Part shown: one piece after another, positions 12,938 to 53,202 of the stretch
Layout of the letters: every line of letters begins with the position of its first letter
Position numbering within the stretch: position 1 is the first letter of the stretch
From: Dendrobates tinctorius
Taxonomy: Eukaryota
Reading direction: 5' to 3'
Length of the DNA: 64,000 nucleotides
Assembly: GCF_039654945.1 (NCBI RefSeq)
Contig: NW_027361684.1
Location: forward strand, 52,452,001-52,516,000
Position numbers and translations under genes: made by a program
The notes under the pieces: generated by a model
The model's database searches: none
What the model was told of the DNA's origin: nothing
The model's input: the letters and a program-made list of their open reading frames with translations, nothing else

Positions 12938-13377
12938 GTGAGAACTATTAGATCAGCGGGGCTCTGAATGCTGAGACTCCCAACAGAACGGGGCACTTGT
13001 AGCAGCGGTTGTGCATGCAGTATGTGCTGCTGCTACATTGATTCTCTAAGGCTAGTTTCACACTTGCTTTTTTTTGCAGCGCGTTTTTCCCGCAAAAAAA
13101 CGCATTAAAAAAACGCATACAAATGCATACAAACGCTGCGTTTTTTTCCAGCATTTTAATGCGCATGCAGGAAAAAAACGCAGCGTTTTTGCGCGTTTGT
13201 ATGCGTTTTTTGTGCGTTTGCGTTTTTTTACAGATTTTGGAAAAACCCCACAAAAAAGAAAAAACAACCATTCAACAACACACAAGACCAATGGGACTTC
13301 ATTGTGGGTGTGGTATGTTAATATATATACACCCTGTCTACAGTATTCTTCACATTTGCTTGATTCTTCTCGTGACC

Positions 13378-14765
13378 ATGGATCTGCGCTGGAAGAGTTT
13401 TCACTTCAACTTGGATTTGGACATCGCGATGGCTCAGGCGTATGCAGTTGCTTGCCATGAACAAAGGAAGAGAGAGAGGCAGCGAAGACGGCGGCGTATG
13501 TGGATACATCCGATTGTTGAACTCCGGGAGAGCCGTGGGGCATACCATACCCTCTACAGCGAGCTCCAGTCAAACCCGGAGAAATTTACAGATTATATCC
13601 GGATGTCCCACGAAAGTTTCATGGATTTGCTTGCTCGTGTCCAACAATCCATCCGGAGACAGGACACACAGCTCCGTCGTGCGATTCCTCCTGAGGAACG
13701 GCTACTGGTGACATTACGGTATGTTTTAAAAACAAAGGGGTGTGGTCTGATGTTTTTTTTTGTAAATTTAGTATTCAAAACCTTGGGTAATTAGTTTTCG
13801 TGAATGTACTAATATTTTTTTTATAGTTTTTAAAAATAATATACATAAATATTAATTTTACTTCTTTGTCTGTTCACAGATTCCTGGCGACTGGAGAAAC
13901 CCTATCCTCACTACACTTCCAGTACCGTATTGGAATCTCTACCTTGTCTGGAATTGTTGCTGACACCTGCCGGGCTCTCTGGAATGTTCTTTGCCCAGAA
14001 TTTATGCCCCTGCCCACCGCTGAAAAGTGGATGGAAATTGCTGACAAATTCTGGACAGTATGCAATTTTCCCAACTGTTTGGGAGCTGTTGATGGGAAAC
14101 ACATACGGATCATCAAACCCCAAAGAACGGGATCTGAGTACTATAATTACAAAAAGTACTTTTCAATAGTACTCATTGCAATTGCGGATGCCGGATGTAT
14201 GTTTGTAGCAGTGGACATTGGAGCATTTGGCCGTGGTAATGACTCGCAGGCTTTTAAAAACTCAGACATGGGCCGGAGGTTGTATGGCAACCAATTTAAT
14301 TTCCCTATGCCACGGCCTCTTCCTCACACCGAAGCTCCGCCACTGCCCTTTGTAATGGTTGGCGATGAGGCTTTTCAAATGTGCGGAAACTTACTGAAAC
14401 CCTACTCCAGCCGGGACTTGGACCACACCAAAAAAATTTTTAATTACAGGCTGACCAGGGCCAGAAGAACTGTCGAGTGTGCTTTTGGGATTCTTGTTTC
14501 CAGATGGCGAATTCTGGGCACGGCCATTAATCTTAAACTTGAAACAGTCGATGAGGTGGTGAAGGCCTGTGTGGTTCTACATAACTTTGTGATGGCTAAA
14601 GAGCACCCGACCTTTGAACTGGACGATGATGCTCCTAACCCATTGCCTGAATTCACTCAGCACACTCTCAGGTCATCCGTTGAAGTTGGCCAAATGAGGG
14701 ACAAATTTGCGGCCTACTTTATTTCTGATGTAGGACGGGTGCACTGGCAAGATGAAATGGTGTAA
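13378..14765 (+). CDS. Harbinger transposase (HARBI1/ALP1-like DDE_Tnp_4), 2 exons, 408 aa
   Basis: Exons 13378-13718 and 13880-14765; the GT-AG intron restores LLVTLR-FLATG. Catalytic motifs GAVDGKH, VGDEAF and RARRTVECAFG present; no stops; AATAAA at 14782. Confidence 0.95.
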
Positions 14766-15133
14766 TGTTGTTGTTTATGGTAATAAAAATCCTTATTTGA
14801 TACCATTACTGAGTGCACTATATTTTTTAAACTCCGATTAATTAAAAAACTTCCCATATATAACTGAATTTTATTATGTTCACACACCTGGGCAGGTAAA
14901 TACACATACGAGTTAAAATGCAGCATTGCTAGTCTGCGTTAAATATATTGGAATGAGCAAAGCTGCAGGCCATGAATCAGGAAACCATTTTTTTTCAAGA
15001 TAAAATTGTGCAAATAGTTTAAAACAAAGTATGTGATTTTCTCAAAACACAACACTCAAAACCCAACCCCAATGAAAGTCCATGGGGAATACAAGTCAGC
15101 ATTGAGTGGATGAATGTAATCTGCTCCATTAAA

Positions 15134-15975
15134 AGTTATTACACTAGGCCTTTGAATGACTATACTAGGCCGTGGTATTTCAAATATGAGTATACTAGGC
15201 CTTGGGGCTAGTAGTATAGTAATATGTGAAATACCACGGCCTAGTATAGTCATACCAAGGCCTACTGTAATAACTCGATTTTTAACAACTAGCATCTTGT
15301 TTCACCAAAAACAAACTGGTGAAACTAGAAAGAAACTTATTTTTTAGACAAGTTTCAACAGTTTGTTTTTCATGAAACCAGATTCTATTTTGTAAAACTA
15401 GAGTTATTACACTAGGCCTTGGAATGACTATACTAGGCCGTGGTATTTCAAATATGAGTATACTAGGCCTTGGGGCTAGTAGTATATGTGAAATACCACG
15501 GCCTAGTATAGTCATACCAAGGCCTACTGTAATAACTCGATTTTTAACAACTAGCATCTTGTTTCACCAAAAACAAACTGGTGAAACTAGAAAGAAACTT
15601 ATTTTTTAGACAAGTTTCAACAGTTTGTTTTTCATGAAACCAGATTCTATTTTGTAAAACTAGAGTTATTACACTAGGCCTTGGAATGACTATACTAGGC
15701 CGTGGTATTTCAAATATGAGTATACTAGGCCTTGGGGCTAGTAGTATATGTGAAATACCACGGCCTAGTATAGTCATACCAAGGCCTACTGTAATAACTC
15801 GATTTTTAACAACTAGCATCTTGTTTCACCAAAAACAAACTGGTGAAACTAGAAAGAAACTTATTTTTTAGACAAGTTTCAACAGTTTGTTTTTCATGAA
15901 ACCAGATTCTATTTTGTAAAACTAGAGTTATTACACTAGGCCTTTGAATGACTATACTAGTCCATGTTATTTCAC
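15134..15975. repeat. 262-bp tandem array (about 3.2 copies), each unit made of two long inverted repeats
   Basis: Period 262 (identical ORFs at 15282/15544 and 15424/15686). In one unit, hairpin A spans 15401-15538 and hairpin B 15541-15659. Confidence 0.92.
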
Positions 15976-16121
15976 ATATGACTATACTAGCCCTTGGGTT
16001 GGTTTTTAACATGTATTTACCCATCAGTGTGTGTGAGCGGCGCAAACAACATTAATGAAACTTATTAATGGTGAACCACAAATGTAAATTTATTTTTTAT
16101 CACAAAAAAAAAATTTAAAAA

Positions 16122-19100
16122 TTATTTTTTACGGCGTTTGGGGGCAGATGGTTTCAATTTGGGGGTGTGCAGGGAATATGCAACACTTGCAGTTGAAGAC
16201 GGTGTTTGAGGGGAAGGGGCAACAAAACTTGTGGGGGAAGGTAGTCCAGTTAAGGGAATTAAACTTGGAACACTTGTAGGAGAGGAAATCTGTTCAGTTA
16301 CATTAGTTGTAATGGCATGTCGCCGTAGGCTTGTGTGCCTGGACCGACTTTGGCCCAATGCCCGCCTTGATTGATTTCGCCTTGAAGTAGGGGCAAATAT
16401 GGAATGTAGGTCCCCCGTCTGCTGGTATGGCTGCTGCTGCTGAGGTGGCGGCTGCTGCTGCAGAGGTTGCGGCTGCTGCTGAGGTGGCGGCTGCTGCTGA
16501 GGTGGCGGCTGCTGCTGAGGTGGCAGCTGCTGCTGAGGTGGTTGCTGCTGCTGAGGTGGTTGCTGCTGCTGCTGAGGTGGCGGCTGCTGCTGAGGTGGTT
16601 GCTGCTGCTGCTGAGGTGGCGGCTGCTGCTGAGGTGGCTGCTGCTGCTGAGGTGGCGTCTGCTGAGTTGGCTGCTGCTGCTGAGGTGGCTGATGCTGCTC
16701 TTCTTGGTCAGTGCTCGTCCTTGCAGGAGGACTGGTGGCGGCAGTGATGGCCCAGGTTTGCAGAGTGGTGGTGGCAGGGCTACTACATGTTGTTGTAGCG
16801 GCAGGGCTGTTCCATGTTTGCCTAGTGGTGGCTGAGCTCCACGCATGCATGGGATTGGCGGTGGTGCTCCAGACAGGAGCAGCGCTTGCCATGGTGGTGT
16901 CGGTGAAGTGACCAGCTGCACTCAGACTTGTGGTGGTGTAACGGTGGGTGTCCAGCCTTTGAAGAGAGGTGTCCGTGCAGTGGTATGCAGCACAAGTCGG
17001 TAGTGAGGTGAAGCGAGTCAATGGTGGCACAGGTGGAAAGGACACCACTGACTGCTGACCGTACCGATTATGCTGCATAGCCTGCAAGAAAGCATTGTTG
17101 CAGGCCTGCAGCACATTCAGCTGTTGATCAGGACTAAGGTGTTCCGCCATGCCCTTTTCAATCTTACTAAAAAAATGGTGTGCTGGTCTGTTGAGGTCGG
17201 CCTCCAGACGGTCAAGGCGCTGTTCTACAGAATTGAAGCGGTGTTCAAAGTGGTTAAAACCACGTTCCATCAGTGCAAAACCGCTTTCAACTCTGTCGGA
17301 CAGTGACTTGAGGCTGGAATTAAATGTCTCGCTCAAATGCATAAACTCGGGCAAGACATTCCTGTCCAAGGCCCTCTGCCGCTGGCGGGTAGTGCCCGCA
17401 TAACCAGTGGCAGAGACCTGGGACAGGGGAACACCTGATGGCCCAGCTTCCTGGTCACCAGCTGTGTGTGTGTGGGACCTGCAAGGTGCTTCCTGGCTGT
17501 CGGATGGCTGGGACGGGTCAGAGGACGTCCGACGAAGGACCGCTCCAGGGCCAGGTTGCAGGGTGCTGCTCCAGGTGCTGTGGAAGAAAGGAAAATCATT
17601 ACTACCATGCCTTTACAAGAAGCATCAGCTGTGGATTAGAAAAACACAGATTAATAAAAATAAAAACCCAAAATGTATAATACTTACGATCTTGTGGCAA
17701 GGACCGGTCTTAGGAACTGCAACGCGTGATAGTGACGGTATCTAGTTCTGGTCCTTGACGCAGATCCACTGCGAACCTGGCCCTCAGCACGAACATCACT
17801 GTTGAAGCGGTCCTTGATCGAACGCCAACGTGTTCGGACTTTGTCCACTGTTGATAAAAAAAAACAGTGCCGTCAAGTACAACACTCACTGCTTCACAAT
17901 TTAGCAATACAATACTCAAAGCAGTCACTGTACACCCCGATGACACTGTTGGGTTTCCTGCTAGAATACACCTAGCACGAAACCCAACAGTGCCGTCAAG
18001 GACAACAGTCACTGCGGCACAATGTAGCAATACAATACTCAAAGCAGTCACTGTAGACCACGATGACACTGTTGGGTTTCCTGCTAGAATACGCCTAGCA
18101 CGAAACCCAACAGTGCCGTCAAGGACAACAGTCACTGCGGCACAATGTAGCAATACAATACTCAAAGCAGTCACTGTAGACCACGATGACACTGTTGGGT
18201 TTCCTGCTAGAATACGCCTAGCACGAAACCCAACAGTGCCGTCAAGGACAACAGTCACTGCGGCACAATGTAGCAATACAATACTCAAAGCAGTCACTGT
18301 AGACCACGATGACACTGTTGGGTTTCCTGCTCGAATACGCCTAGCACGAAACCCAACAGTGCCGTCAAGGACAACAGTCACTGCGGCACAATGTAGCAAT
18401 ACAATACTCAAAGCAGTCACTGTAGACCACGATGACACTGTTGGGTTTCCTGCTAGAATACGCCTAGCACGAAACCCAACAGTGCCGTCAAGGACAACAG
18501 TCACTGCGGCACAATGTAGCAATACAATACTCAAAGCAGTCACTGTAGACCACGATGACACTGTTGGGTTTCCTGCTAGAATACGCCTAGCACGAAACCC
18601 AACAGTGCCGTCAAGGACAACAGTCACTGCGGCACAATGTAGCAATACAATACTCAAAGCAGTCACTGTAGACCCCGATGACACTGTTGGGTTTCCTGCT
18701 CGAATACGCCTAGCACGAAACCCAACAGTGCCGTCAAGGACAACAGTCACTGCGGCACAATGTAGCAATACAATACTCAAAGCAGTCACTGTAGACCACG
18801 ATGACACTGTTGGGTTTCCTGCTAGAATACGCCTAGCACGAAACCCAACAGTGCCGTCAAGGACAACAGTCACTGCGGCACAATACAGAGCAGGGAAATA
18901 CTCACTAAACGCCTTTTTGGCGGATGCTGTGGCGCTGTCCCAGCCATCCATCAACGCTGCGGCCACCTCATTCCATAGCCGCCGTGTCACCACATTGTCC
19001 TTGTACAGCCGGTCACGGCTGTCCCACAACGGCGAACGCTCCTGGACCAGGCTGATGAGCTGCTCATTATCCAGGTAGACGTCTTCATCCCGTTGTGGAA

Positions 19101-19449
19101 CCTAGACAAAACACATTCATTAGAATAATCAAATTTAAATTGACTAAAAAGTTACAAAAAAAGAAAAAAAAAAAAGAGTAAAAATAGAAGATAAAAAAAA
19201 AAAAAAAACATTACAAATCATTTGATACTTACATTACGTATCACCACCGGGACTTGGCTTCGCTGCTCCTGCTGTTCGCCCTCACTATTCCCGTCCGCAG
19301 ATGATGATGACGATGTCTGAAAATTGAAAAAAACGTAAGAGATTTGGAGAAGCAGCAGATATACTTACCAGATGCACGAAAATAATCACCTCACGGTCTG
19401 CTTGCGCCAATTCCTGCCGCGATGGGGAATACTCCGATTCTGAAGACAT
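16122..19449 (-). CDS. Harbinger Myb/SANT-like (MADF) DNA-binding protein, 5 coding exons, about 651 aa
   Basis: Exons 19449-19390, 19316-19233, 19101-18906, 17847-17688 and 17577-16122, all GT-AG and phase-consistent. MADF signature LISLVQERSPLWD..Y......LWNEVA....VRTRWRSIKDRF; coiled-coil-like region, Q/P tract, C-terminal PKRRKK. The first donor has an alternative at 19369. Confidence 0.88.
16425..16700 (-). repeat. Coding CAG-rich repeat (QQQQPP tract)
   Basis: Repeated GCTGCTGCTGAGGTGG units on the plus strand encode PPQQQ repeats on the minus strand. Confidence 0.9.
17862..18884. repeat. 123-bp intronic tandem array (8.3 copies), one hairpin per unit
   Basis: CCTAGCACG recurs at 17971, 18094, 18217 ... 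18832. The array fills intron 17848-18905 of the MADF gene. Confidence 0.95.
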
Positions 19450-19612
19450 ACTGCATGTAAAAATAATAAAAATCATTAGTACATACATAATTTAAAAGGA
19501 CAGGCATATAATGTAATATACTCACATTCTTCGCTGATATAATGTGTTCTTGGTTGAATGTCTGCTCTTCAATCTGTCTAGTGTAGTAGTGGCAGAGTTT
19601 TGGCAGGCACCT

Positions 19613-19625
19613 CCTTTATATAGCC
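19613..19625 (-). promoter_or_regulatory. TATA box of the MADF gene
   Basis: GGCTATATAAAGG on the minus strand, about 90 bp upstream of a gtgagt donor at 19525 (non-coding first exon). Confidence 0.55.
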
Positions 19626-20619
19626 TTTTTTTTTTGGACTTTAGAAGATTCTAACTAGGATAAAAAGTGGACACCACCCAAAAAACGCTGCGCTAAAAAA
19701 GCGCATACCTGCGCATGCCAGTGCGCACGTATGCGCATCCATAGGCTATAATGGCCATTTTTAGCGCAAAACGTGCGCATACGTGCGCATGCGATTTTTT
19801 CAAGGGCCAAAAAATGCAACATGCAGCGTCTGGAAAATACCAACGCACACCCCAAAAAAACGCAGCGCATGAAAATCGCATACATGCGCTTACAAGTGCG
19901 CAGGTATGCGCACCCATGTTAAATATAGGGGAAAAATCGCATGCGCACGTATGCGTTTTTTTCCAGCGCTAAAAAACGCAAATGTGAAACCAGCCTAAGC
20001 GACTGCTGAAAATAACAGAGTGCTGTACTTGGCTCCATGGCAATATCATAGAACGTGAACTGAGCAGGGGTGTAACCACCACTTCATTCTAAAGAAGAAA
20101 AAACTGACAAATCGGTAGGTAGAATTTGCCAAAATTCAATGCAAATTATGATAAACACAATTTTTTTTTTGGAGATATTATTTAGAGAACCATAAGTAAA
20201 TAGGCTGACATTCTGCCATATAGAAAAATAAAACCTTCCGGTAATTTCATATTACATACCGCCTCTTCACATTCAAATCATATGGTGACATGGGTAGCGC
20301 AACACCAAAATTGCAGCGACACATTGCAACATTGATATAATATTTCCTTTGATGCCTTACCGACACCTACGGCACAAAGTTACATATTTCCAAATGTGTG
20401 GGACTTTCTATTGCTGTTTGCAAGTAACACCAACCCGCTTCATTGGTTTGAATGCATGTTGCACACGACATGCAACTTGTCTGCAACCTACTTTATTATT
20501 ATTACTTACAACATTTGTGTACCTTGTCTATGACTTGCCATTTTGCAGCTATTTTACAGCTATGATTATGATATTGCTGTACATAACACAGCCAAGTTGA
20601 ACATTTCTTTAGAAAATAC

Positions 20620-52765: not shown

Positions 52766-53202
52766 GGCTAGTTTCACACTAGCGTCACAGGGCGAAGCGC
52801 ACGGCCGCCGCTAAGCTCCGCCCCAGCTGCACCCCCTCCGGTCGGCTCCTCCTTTGATCGCATGACGCTGCATGCGATCAGTGTACCCTATATTTAGCGT
52901 TGGGTATGCTGGTCGTGTGCTGGCACACTTTTCCCGGCGTATTCGCCCTTTTGGAGCTGCGCCAACGTGCGCCAAACGCACTGTGTTGCATTTTTCTGCC
53001 CTCGACGCAGCGCCAAAGGGGCGGATGCGCTGGCAAAAGTGTGCCAGTGCATGACCAGCGTACTCAACGCTAAATATAGGGTACGCTGATCGCATGCAGC
53101 GTCATGCGATCAGAGGAGGAGCTGACCGGAGTGGGTGCGGCCAGGGGCGGCGCTTAGCGGCAGCCATGCACTGTGCCCTGTAACGCTAGTGTGAAACTAG
53201 CC
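52766..53202. mobile_element. Harbinger MITE (palindromic)
   Basis: Perfect TIR GGCTAGTTTCACACTAGCGT; TAA on the left flank. Confidence 0.9.

What the first reader, a model, noticed from the sequence alone, without database searches (positions are those of the whole stretch)
17862..18884. Eight pre-miRNA-like hairpins arrayed in the intron that splits the MADF domain
Seen: on the transcribed strand each 123-bp unit contains GACGGCACTGTTGGGTTTCGTGCTAG-GCGTATT-CTAGCAGGAAACCCAACAGTGTCATC. This is a 26-bp stem with two mismatches, one G-U pair and a 7-nt loop, extendable by looser basal pairing; hairpins recur every 123 nt. The eight copies are near-identical and fill almost the whole intron. Known: this geometry resembles intronic polycistronic pri-miRNA clusters. 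Inference: together with the 262-bp array, this Harbinger may carry its own small-RNA or structured-RNA system co-expressed with the partner protein. This is my best candidate for an undescribed system here.
Basis: partly seen in the sequence, partly recalled or inferred. Interest (0 to 1): 0.82.

Follow-up and report, generated by a model that had tools for sequence, protein, structure and literature searches.

The report
Amplified conserved hairpin in transposon intron
A poison-frog Harbinger transposon has one intron filled by eight tandem copies of a 123-base hairpin; related transposons carry the same hairpin once, kept by paired compensating mutations, so it is probably a functional RNA structure, though nothing yet shows it makes microRNAs.

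Summary
Window 17863-18884 holds 8.3 units of 123 bp at 98% identity. Each unit carries the described 26-bp stem, which extends to 45-nt arms. The array fills 1022 of 1058 nt of a real intron (17848-18905, minus strand). RNA-derived contigs skip this intron, and it splits the MADF domain of the partner gene of a complete PIF/Harbinger element (13050-19996, TSD TAA) of Dendrobates tinctorius.

The scan met this array before on other copies (s1-386048, s1-376857), and both follow-ups called it an ordinary minisatellite. I agree that the array itself behaves like one: 5.3, 6, 8.3 and 12 units in different copies.

The unit, however, is not junk. Five diverged lineages in D. tinctorius and Ranitomeya variabilis carry one intact hairpin in a ~160-nt intron at the same position; a sixth, in R. 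imitator, carries a partly deleted one. Its 16-bp core is more conserved than codon position 2. Fifteen of 23 stem pairs show compensatory double changes. A Bufo homologue has a sense-strand-only hairpin in the same intron.

Best reading: an ancestral, selected intronic RNA stem-loop acting in cis, later amplified in tandem. MicroRNA or siRNA production was not testable here, matches no known family, and stays a live rival. Function remains inferred.

The parts
13050..19996 (.). Complete PIF/Harbinger element. TIRs are GGCTAGTTTCACAC (left) and GGCTGGTTTCACAT (right, reverse complement), flanked by a TAA target-site duplication.
   Evidence: Searches give the ends and the TSD. One search shows the same TIR in other lineages. 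One search finds the DDE_Tnp_4 transposase and the MADF partner.
13866..14765 (+). Main transposase exon (DDE_Tnp_4). The upstream exon is joined by splicing out 13718-13878.
   Evidence: One search gives Pfam E 5.4e-27. One search shows the GT..AG joint 13717/13879.
16122..17577 (-). Last exon of the MADF partner gene, containing a PQ-rich repeat at 16428-16699.
   Evidence: One search lists the ORF. One search shows the joint 17577/17688. One search finds homologues at 96-100% identity in D. tinctorius.
17688..17847 (-). Partner-gene exon encoding the second half of the MADF domain (DKVRTRWRSIKDRF...).
   Evidence: One search matches MADF profile positions 44-84. One search gives the joints.
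17848..18905 (-). The intron that splits the MADF domain. It is 1058 nt, begins GTGAGT and ends (T)9ATCAACAG.
   Evidence: an X17 contig skips it and X1 loose ends match both exon edges; the P0008 junction; the sequence.
17863..18884 (-). Tandem array of 8.3 units of 123 bp. Each unit is nearly the whole body of the ancestral intron.
   Evidence: homology of unit and flanks to the single-copy introns.
18785..18873 (-). Hairpin 1 (first transcribed). The seven others lie at 18662-18750, 18539-18627, 18416-18504, 18293-18381, 18170-18258, 18047-18135 and 17924-18012.
   Evidence: One search gives covariance-model hits of 73-84 bits. One search gives the fold at -62.4 kcal/mol, z -10.3.
17863..17900 (-). 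Final partial unit, 5' arm only. It holds the CTTGAC branch-point-like motif about 26 nt upstream of the real acceptor. Its CACTGTT can pair with the AACAGTG of the acceptor.
   Evidence: Read directly. The branch-point role is inferred.
18906..19099 (-). Partner-gene exon encoding the first half of the MADF domain (...KKAF).
   Evidence: One search matches MADF profile positions 1-37. One search gives the joints 17847/18906 and 19099/19231.
15134..15998 (.). Second internal array, 262 bp x 3.3 and itself palindromic, lying between the convergent 3' ends of the two genes. It is not part of the intron hairpin system but belongs to the same element.
   Evidence: One search shows an X17 contig lacking 792 bp of it. 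One search shows 240 bp x 5.3 in the L001 copy.

Best explanation
The array is a tandem amplification of almost the whole body of a short ancestral intron. The core of that intron is an evolutionarily conserved RNA stem-loop of about 40 bp.

Shown. In related Harbinger lineages the intron is about 160 nt and holds one hairpin. In the D. tinctorius subfamilies nearest to this copy, the 123-bp intron body was duplicated head-to-tail. Its number now drifts between copies (2 to 12 units), as in a minisatellite. The hairpin's pairing has been kept through many compensatory substitutions.

Inferred. The hairpin acts in cis in the partner-gene pre-mRNA. Each unit folds on itself as it is transcribed. 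Folding keeps the 5' splice site and the branch point/acceptor effectively close. It also buries the decoy acceptor (CAACAG|TG) and the branch-point-like motif (CTTGAC) that every unit carries. This would explain why a 1058-nt intron made of eight units is still removed correctly, and why amplification was tolerated.

Dicer or Drosha may cut such stems as a by-product. Small-RNA production is not required by this reading and has not been shown.
For: 1. The intron is real and is spliced out despite the array (joint 17847/18906; P0008 junction).

2. The single hairpin is ancestral. L003, L004, L006, L007 and L009 each have a 160-178-nt intron at the same MADF position with one intact hairpin of 31-40 bp. 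The hairpins alone fold at -42 to -51 kcal/mol, z -8 to -11. L008 has the same intron with a partly deleted hairpin.

3. The sequence is conserved. Among the five intact lineages, hairpin identity is 0.69 and core-arm identity is 0.83. Codon positions 1/2/3 give 0.71/0.75/0.59. With L008 included or excluded, neighbouring introns give 0.38-0.47.

4. The pairs covary. On 12 hairpins, 90.1% of cells are paired against 73.7% in shuffles. Fifteen of 23 pairs changed on both sides. No shuffle in 500 reached the observed value on any of five measures. Shifted-partner controls give 27-46% paired. On the five single-copy lineages alone, 12 of 39 pairs show double changes.

5. The pairing leans towards the transcribed strand. 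Arms hold 36 G.U against 13 A.C pairs. The sense fold is better in 7 of 10 hairpins. The Bufo intron folds only in sense (z -3.1 against +1.3).

6. The Bufo gene has no transposase or matching TIR within 4 kb yet keeps a structured intron there. This points to a role tied to the gene's RNA, not to transposition.

7. The stem base lies 36-40 nt from the 5' splice site and 37-41 nt from the acceptor in four of the single-copy introns (read). Intron-bridging stems built of GT/AC repeats are a known class (PMC4691745).

8. Copy number varies between copies: 8.3 here, 5.3 in L001, about 6 in L002, 2.2 in L005.
Against: - No experiment or read data bear on function. The splicing role is inferred from geometry alone.
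- A 160-nt vertebrate intron does not need a bridge. Structure-only selection also does not explain why the 16-bp core sequence is so strongly conserved in the single-copy lineages.
- The strand bias is not uniform: L004 and L007 fold better in antisense.
- About 14 of 19 compensatory change types are transversion pairs (GC<->CG, AU<->UA). Such pairs cannot pass through a G.U intermediate. They fit arm-to-arm template switching (PMC8794818), or misalignment between the two hairpin groups, as well as selection.
- The units in this window lack the GT/AC repeats of the known bridging class.
- The runs used are labelled 'RNA?' by guess only.
Confidence: 0.42

Rival explanations
1. Small-RNA precursor. 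Each hairpin is cut from the intron by Drosha/Dicer, or by Dicer alone after debranching, into miRNA-like or hairpin-siRNA products. That production is the selected function. The array then works as a polycistronic cluster that raises dosage.
For: - The stems are 38-45 bp, in sense orientation, in a spliced intron of an expressed gene.
- In the single-copy lineages the conservation pattern resembles a pri-miRNA: a moderately conserved ~13-bp base, a highly conserved 16-22-bp core duplex (identity 0.83), and a variable apical part.
- The Bufo hairpin is imperfect, rich in G.U pairs, and has a large terminal loop.
- Tandemly amplified intronic hairpin clusters are known. From memory: mouse Sfmbt2 miR-466/467/669, zebrafish miR-430, primate C19MC.
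- A near-perfect 40-bp dsRNA is a plausible Dicer substrate.
Against: - No small-RNA data could be reached.
- No Rfam family is near threshold. Hits are generic and occur on both strands.
- Apical loops are only 4-7 nt and the stems are nearly perfect, which is atypical for animal Drosha substrates.
- Arm sequences differ between this copy, L002, L005 and the single-copy group, so no seed is conserved.
- The hairpin has no extended complementarity to the transposase or to the rest of the window; the best match is 12 nt at E 0.26.
- The benefit to a transposon is unclear.
Confidence: 0.25
2. No RNA function. The unit is a DNA palindrome whose arms are kept alike by replication or gap-repair template switching. 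The array is an ordinary transposon-internal minisatellite, as the two earlier follow-ups of this scan concluded.
For: - Unit number varies among copies: 5.3 in L001 and 8.3 here, plus the scan notes of 6 and 12.
- The hairpin folds on both strands in most lineages.
- Many compensatory changes are transversion pairs, as expected if one arm is copied onto the other in one event (mechanism in PMC8794818).
- Internal arrays are common in this element; a second array of 262 bp exists.
- Cut-and-paste transposons are copied by gap repair, which is prone to slippage at palindromes (general knowledge).
Against: - Template switching keeps arms complementary. It cannot keep the sequence alike between lineages whose other introns are saturated: hairpin core 0.83 against neighbouring introns 0.38-0.47 and codon position 3 at 0.59.
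- There is an excess of G.U over A.C pairs.
- The Bufo hairpin folds in sense only.
- Variant units within this array carry uncompensated changes, for example CTAG>CTCG in two units.
Confidence: 0.2
3. DNA-level cis element. The palindrome is a binding site for the transposase, the MADF protein or a host factor. It could be an internal TIR-like decoy or a transposition enhancer.
For: - Both arms of the palindrome are strongly conserved in sequence in the single-copy lineages.
- The apex GGAGTTTC...CACAC loosely resembles the TIR GGCTAGTTTCACAC.
- The Bufo intron loop holds an exact 12-nt TIR match, CTAGTTTCACAC.
Against: - Hairpin k-mers are not enriched in the terminal 300 bp of four elements.
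- The motif changes freely with covariation across lineages, which a protein-binding site would not tolerate.
- The TIR-like stretch is not at homologous positions in the two hairpin groups.
- The solitary Bufo gene keeps a structured intron without any transposon ends within 4 kb.
- A MITE in the window with the same TIRs lacks the hairpin.
Confidence: 0.1

Closest known systems
Transposon-internal minisatellites (tandem repeats inside DNA transposons and MITEs, variable between copies)
   Same: The units are head-to-tail and 98% alike. They lie in a non-coding part of the element. Their number differs between copies (2.2, 5.3, ~6, 8.3; scan notes 6 and 12). The edge units are the most divergent.
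   Different: The unit is not arbitrary sequence. It is the body of an intron whose hairpin pre-dates the amplification. That hairpin is conserved with covariation across lineages and genera.
Intron-bridging RNA structures, (AC)m-(GT)n introns (Lin et al. 2016, PMC4691745)
   Same: Complementary intronic segments form a stable stem between the 5' splice site and the branch/acceptor region. The single-copy relatives use a GUGUGUG/CACACAC core.
   Different: Here the structure is one discrete, sequence-conserved ~40-bp stem-loop, not simple dinucleotide repeats at the intron ends. The units in this window have lost the GT/AC core. Dependence of splicing on the stem is untested. The host is a transposon gene in a frog.
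Polycistronic or tandemly amplified intronic miRNA clusters (from memory: mouse Sfmbt2 intron 10 miR-466/467/669, zebrafish miR-430, primate C19MC)
   Same: Arrays of similar hairpins about 120 nt apart sit in an intron on the transcribed strand and arose by tandem duplication.
   Different: No small RNAs are known from these hairpins and no known family matches. The stems are nearly perfect with 4-7-nt loops. No seed is conserved between lineages. The locus is multicopy and mobile.
Hairpins created and maintained by template switching (Monttinen and Loytynoja 2022, PMC8794818)
   Same: A long perfect stem shows compensatory changes, including transversion pairs.
   Different: Between-lineage sequence conservation at or above exon level, and a sense-strand G.U excess, are not explained by that mechanism alone.

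Membership tests
PIF/Harbinger transposon | Terminal inverted repeats flanked by a 3-bp TWA target-site duplication | tested here: met
   GGCTAGTTTCACAC and GGCTGGTTTCACAT sit at 13050 and 19996, and TAA flanks both ends. The same TIR occurs in five other lineages.
PIF/Harbinger transposon | Two genes: a DDE_Tnp_4 transposase and a Myb/SANT-like DNA-binding partner | tested here: met
   Pfam gives DDE_Tnp_4 at E 5.4e-27. The MADF domain is split over two exons.
Transposon-internal minisatellite | Head-to-tail units inside the element, with unit number differing between copies of the family | tested here: met
   There are 8.3 units here and 5.3 in L001 at 96-98% identity. L002 has about 6 and L005 has 2.2. 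Scan notes report 6 and 12.
Animal miRNA / polycistronic pri-miRNA cluster | Discrete 20-24-nt 5p and 3p reads with 2-nt 3' overhangs and homogeneous 5' ends | not testable with these tools
All runs offered are Logan contigs, which cannot show small RNAs.
Animal miRNA / polycistronic pri-miRNA cluster | Imperfect stem of about 35 bp with single-stranded flanks and a sizeable terminal loop | tested here: inconclusive
   Stems are 38-45 bp and nearly perfect, with loops of 4-7 nt and 28-nt spacers. In the full intron many inter-unit pairings compete with the local hairpins.
Animal miRNA / polycistronic pri-miRNA cluster | Membership of a described miRNA family | tested here: not met
   The best Rfam hit in the array is MIR447 at 38.5 bits against a gathering score of 200. 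Nothing reaches gathering in seven related loci.
Animal miRNA / polycistronic pri-miRNA cluster | Mature or seed sequence conserved among homologous hairpins | tested here: inconclusive
   The core is conserved (0.83) within the five single-copy lineages. It differs between this copy, L002, L005 and that group, with both arms covarying.
Structured (bridging) intron, Lin et al. 2016 | Complementary segments on either side of the intron form a stable stem between the 5' splice site and the branch/acceptor | tested here: met
   In the single-copy introns the stem base is 36-40 nt from the donor and 37-41 nt from the acceptor. Here eight such stems lie in series and the intron is spliced.
Structured (bridging) intron, Lin et al. 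2016 | Arms made of AC and GT dinucleotide repeats | tested here: not met
   The relatives have only (GT)3-4/(AC)3-4 inside a longer unique stem. This window's units read TTGGGTTTCG/AGGAAACCCAA.
Structured (bridging) intron, Lin et al. 2016 | Splicing accuracy depends on the stem | not testable with these tools
   This needs minigene mutagenesis with compensatory rescue.
Nested MITE / foldback insertion | Target-site duplication at the ends of the palindrome, and dispersed copies elsewhere in the genome | tested here: not met
   No TWA duplication flanks the stem in any lineage. The covariance model finds the hairpin only in this intron across 262,936 bases held. That sample is small, so the absence is weak evidence.

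The most novel reading that the evidence does not exclude
A vertebrate DNA-transposon family encodes its own selected small-RNA gene. An intronic hairpin has been conserved by compensatory evolution across dendrobatid Harbinger lineages, and perhaps retained in a solitary Bufo MADF gene. It would be processed into miRNA-like or hairpin-siRNA products. The most prolific D. tinctorius subfamily has amplified it into a polycistronic array of 5-12 hairpins that is co-expressed with the partner protein.
Probability: 0.17. Interest if true: 0.82.

Novelty: new variant of a known kind. Interest (0 to 1): 0.55.

Why it matters
Tandem repeats inside transposons are usually dismissed as slippage products, and two earlier follow-ups of this scan did so for sister copies. 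This analysis shows that the repeated unit is an old, conserved, covarying RNA stem-loop. It sits in the intron that splits the DNA-binding domain of the Harbinger partner gene. I found no report of a selected non-coding RNA structure in a eukaryotic cut-and-paste transposon.

Whichever role proves correct, it offers a tractable case of a mobile element regulating its own expression through RNA structure. It may control splicing of the partner protein, or it may yield small RNAs. It also gives a natural series of 1, 2, 5, 6, 8 and 12 hairpins for testing how structured repeats affect splicing and small-RNA output. If it is only a palindrome kept by template switching, it is still a clean example of that mechanism acting over long evolutionary time.

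Tried and rejected
- **Known RNA family.** Rfam, at both gathering and permissive thresholds, was run on the window, seven related loci and two hairpin introns. It returned only generic sub-threshold miRNA-model hits on both strands. Rejected.
- **Target in cis.** The hairpin was compared with the rest of the window by blastn-short. The longest match was 12 nt at E 0.26, and nothing hit the transposase gene.
- **Copy of the subterminal binding motifs.** No 8- or 9-mers of the hairpin are enriched in the terminal 300 bp of four elements.
- **Nested dispersed MITE.** No TSD flanks the stem. A covariance-model search of 263 kb found the hairpin only in this intron. The MITE at 52766-53202 shares only the TIRs.
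- **TIR mimic at the apex.** The resemblance is loose and lies at non-homologous positions in the two hairpin groups. Only the 12-nt Bufo match is striking, and it is left unexplained.
- **Small-RNA evidence.** The one run search returned only Logan contigs. The one read-laying run gave splice joints but cannot show small RNAs. A preprint with poison-frog small-RNA data (Allobates, PMC13622530) mentions neither these sequences nor transposons.
- **Literature.** No paper on hairpins or arrays in Harbinger introns was found. The D. tinctorius genome paper does not mention Harbinger.
- **Failed look-ups.** P0131 and the Anomaloglossus protein P0195 had no gene on record.
- **Failed scripts.** Two scripts for shuffle z-scores timed out. 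The fold tool's own shuffles were used instead.
- **Coding repeat.** The array is open in the exon-2 frame (439-aa ORF). One NCBI model, P0060, translates a sister array in frame. In this copy retention shifts the frame, because 1058 is not a multiple of 3. One frame open over 41 codons is not unusual. Rejected as the primary role.
Full report
**1. What is in the window**

Tandem Repeats Finder reports one array at 17863-18884. Its period is 123 bp, with 8.3 copies, 98% matches and no indels. The unit listing shows six almost identical inner units, two units with a CTAG>CTCG change, a more divergent edge unit, and a 38-nt partial unit.

Its 26 positions comprise 23 Watson-Crick pairs, one G-U pair and two mismatches, around a 7-nt loop. 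The inverted repeat continues outward to arms of 44-45 nt that are 82% complementary. A unit is therefore a 95-nt imperfect palindrome plus a 28-nt spacer.

The hairpin folds at -62.4 kcal/mol (z -10.3) on the minus strand and at -52.9 (z -9.8) on the plus strand. The 19-nt core motif occurs 16 times in the 64 kb, all inside the array, where 0.03 are expected.

**2. Context**

The array lies in a complete PIF/Harbinger element at 13050-19996.
- The TIRs are GGCTAGTTTCACAC and GGCTGGTTTCACAT, flanked by a TAA duplication.
- A DDE_Tnp_4 transposase lies on the plus strand (Pfam E 5.4e-27).
- A convergent MADF-domain partner gene lies on the minus strand.
- Protein homologues at 96-100% identity are all annotated in Dendrobates tinctorius, which identifies the genome.

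Laying the contigs of four public runs on 13500-19450 gave canonical joints. They are 13717/13879 on the plus strand and 17577/17688, 17847/18906 and 19099/19231 on the minus strand. Each has GT..AG on its gene's strand. The 17847/18906 joint skips 1058 nt. It is seen in a contig of X17, and loose ends in X1 read exactly the neighbouring exon edges.

The runs are only guessed to be RNA. However, four canonical introns in two genes, the small size of the contig sets, and the NCBI model P0008 of a sister copy all point the same way. P0008 reads ...SSKKAF-M-DKVRTRWRSIKD across the junction. The intron 17848-18905 is therefore real. Exon 2 matches MADF profile positions 1-37 and exon 3 matches positions 44-84, so the intron does split the domain. 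The array is 1022 of its 1058 bases.

**3. Other copies and other lineages**

Nine partner-gene loci were fetched through homologous proteins: L001-L009. A more distant Bufo locus, L010, was also fetched.

| Locus | Species / relation | Intron content |
|---|---|---|
| L001 | sister copy, 92-98% identical | 5.3 units |
| L002 | family about 75% identical | about six 123-bp units: five of one diverged hairpin type, one edge unit close to this window's type |
| L005 | D. tinctorius | 2.2 decayed units, then a ~6-kb LTR-element insertion |
| L003, L007, L009 | Ranitomeya variabilis | one long hairpin in a 160-178-nt intron |
| L004, L006 | D. tinctorius | one long hairpin in a 161-164-nt intron |
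| L008 | R. imitator | apex of the hairpin partly deleted |

The two earlier scan notes on this genome report 6 and 12 units.

In the five intact single-copy lineages the intron lies at exactly the same place in the MADF domain. Each holds one hairpin of 31-40 bp with a 4-6-nt loop. The hairpins alone fold at -42 to -51 kcal/mol, z -8 to -11.

The multiple alignment shows that the 123-bp unit is homologous to almost the whole body of these short introns. The homology runs from just after the donor to just before the polypyrimidine tract. For example, L005 reads TTGGCCGTGATGACA and L006 reads TTGGCCGTGATCACA.

A tree of the two MADF exons groups this copy with L001 (support 100) and then with L002 (88). 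L005 is the next nearest. The single-hairpin lineages lie outside this group, and L008+L009 form a deep branch. The single hairpin is therefore ancestral. The tandem amplification is specific to a group of D. tinctorius subfamilies. This rests on only 348 columns, so one origin of the amplification is likely but not proven.

**4. Is the hairpin maintained?**

*Sequence conservation.* Among the five intact single-copy lineages:

| Segment | Mean pairwise identity |
|---|---|
| Codon position 1 | 0.71 |
| Codon position 2 | 0.75 |
| Codon position 3 | 0.59 |
| Whole hairpin | 0.69 |
| 16-bp core arms (CCAACTGTGTGTGATG / CATCACACACAGTTGG) | 0.83 |

In the separate comparison, run both with and without L008, the two neighbouring introns give 0.38-0.47. 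That is about what alignment of unrelated sequence gives. The core of the hairpin is thus the best-conserved stretch of this part of the gene.

*Covariation.* On an alignment of 12 hairpins from all lineages, RNAalifold predicts a 23-pair helix. Fifteen of its pairs keep pairing through changes on both sides. Counting that structure gives:
- 90.1% of cells paired, against 73.7% after shuffling partners;
- 43 double-change cells, against 15 after shuffling;
- 0 of 500 shuffles reaching the observed value on any of five measures;
- 27-46% paired when the partners are shifted by 1-3 columns.

On the five single-copy lineages alone, where the alignment is unambiguous, 12 of 39 pairs show double changes. 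One example is T-A to C-G in the L008/L009 branch.

Three caveats apply. Rows are related, and two are near-duplicates. The alignment between the two hairpin groups is uncertain in the apical part. About 14 of 19 types of double change are transversion pairs, which cannot pass through a G-U intermediate.

**5. RNA or DNA?**

Non-Watson-Crick positions in the ungapped arms are G.U on the transcribed strand 36 times and A.C 13 times. Leaving out the sister copy and the dead L005 copy gives 22 against 8. A DNA palindrome or neutral decay predicts equality.

The sense fold is the more stable in 7 of 10 hairpins, by 4.8 kcal/mol on average. L004 and L007 go the other way.

The Bufo bufo homologue is 34% identical and is also present in B. 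gargarizans. It has no transposase or Harbinger TIR within 4 kb. Its intron lies at the same MADF position (L010:4525-4733) and forms a ~33-bp, G.U-rich hairpin in sense only (z -3.1 against +1.3 in antisense).

Together these results lean towards an RNA-level structure on the transcribed strand. They do not prove it.

**6. What it is not, as far as can be tested**

- It matches no Rfam family.
- It has no extended complementarity to the transposase gene or to anything else in the window.
- It is not a copy of the subterminal motifs.
- A covariance model built from the alignment finds it only in this intron across 263 kb of held sequence. No target-site duplication flanks it, so a nested dispersed MITE is not supported.
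- No paper describing it was found.

**7. Mechanism**

*Shown.* This is an ancestral, conserved, covarying intronic stem-loop. It was amplified in tandem in some subfamilies. Its copy number is unstable. The amplified intron is still spliced.

*Inferred.* I take it to be a cis-acting structure of the partner-gene pre-mRNA.
- In four single-copy introns (L003, L004, L006, L007) the stem base sits 36-40 nt from the donor and 37-41 nt from the acceptor. Once folded, the intron is effectively a minimal one.
- Stems that bridge splice sites, built on GT/AC complementarity, are an established class (PMC4691745).
- In the array each unit carries CAACAG|TG, a copy of the true acceptor ATCAACAG|TG. Each unit also carries a CTTGAC branch-point-like motif. 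Both are buried in the stem.
- Only the last, partial unit leaves them exposed, next to the T9 tract.
- The donor-like GTGAGT has become TTGAGT in the repeated copies.
- Local folding would thus explain how eight units can be tolerated.

The full-intron fold (-569.6 kcal/mol) shows many equally good inter-unit pairings. Co-transcriptional folding would have to favour the local stems.

I give this reading 0.42. Its main weakness is that a 160-nt intron hardly needs a bridge, and structure alone does not explain the sequence conservation of the core.

**8. Rivals**

- *Small-RNA precursor as the selected function (0.25).* The conserved-core and variable-apex pattern and the 38-45-bp stems fit a pri-miRNA or hairpin-siRNA. 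No reads were available, loops are tiny, and seeds are not shared between lineages.
- *Neutral palindrome kept by template switching plus minisatellite dynamics (0.20).* This fits the transversion pairs and the copy-number drift (PMC8794818). It does not fit the between-lineage sequence conservation.
- *DNA-level binding site (0.10).* The only support is the loose TIR likeness and the unexplained 12-nt TIR match in the Bufo loop.

**9. Relation to earlier notes of this scan**

The same array was found on two other pieces of this genome, and both follow-ups filed it as an ordinary transposon-internal tandem repeat (s1-386048, s1-376857). I agree about the array's dynamics and that a miRNA cluster is not shown. 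I add that the repeated unit is an ancestral, conserved, covarying hairpin. This raises the interest of the unit itself, not of its eight-fold repetition.

**10. Verdict**

This is a new variant of known kinds (structured intron element; transposon-internal array). Function is unproven.

Noticed in passing
window 52766-53202: A 437-bp MITE with the same Harbinger TIRs (GGCTAGTTTCACACTAGCG...). It is itself a long foldback. It shares only the TIRs with the autonomous element and lacks the intron hairpin.
   Followed up: partly
window 17051-17121 (minus strand); also L001:66251-66321: A ~24-bp hairpin lies inside the coding last exon of the partner gene, in the region encoding LNVLQACNNAFLQAMQHN. 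It folds at -40.6 kcal/mol, z -4.0. The intron-hairpin covariance model picked it up weakly (E 0.009 and 0.0016).
   Followed up: partly
window 15134-15998; L001:67307-68579: The second internal array (262 bp x 3.3 here, 240 bp x 5.3 in L001) is itself palindromic. It varies between copies: one X17 contig joins 15133 to 15926 and so lacks 792 bp.
   Followed up: partly
L010:4613-4624 (Bufo bufo): The apical loop of the Bufo intron hairpin contains CTAGTTTCACAC. This is an exact 12-nt match to the dendrobatid Harbinger TIR GGCTAGTTTCACAC. The locus has no other such motif and no transposase within 4 kb. Roughly 1e-4 such matches are expected by chance. Unexplained.
   Followed up: partly
window 17710-19029 (minus strand); protein P0060: The array is open in the exon-2 reading frame, giving a 41-residue repeat (AAVTVVLDGTVGFRARRILAGNPTVSS...). 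One NCBI gene model of a sister copy, P0060, translates the array in frame into exon 3. In this copy retention would shift the frame.
   Followed up: partly
L005:4400-10420: In this copy the hairpin intron holds 2.2 decayed units followed by a ~6-kb insertion. The insertion has 49-bp tandem repeats at both ends, consistent with an LTR retroelement. This copy is therefore dead.
   Followed up: no
window 16428-16699: An 18/39-bp tandem repeat encodes the (PPQQQ)n tract of the partner protein. Contigs of other copies carry 3-bp insertions here (GCA, GCT), so its length varies between copies.
   Followed up: no
window 13108-13211 and 19680-19980: The subterminal regions are built from short GCGTTTTT/TGCGCA-type motifs in both orientations, including a 47-nt inverted repeat at 13108-13211. 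These are likely binding sites for the element's proteins.
   Followed up: no
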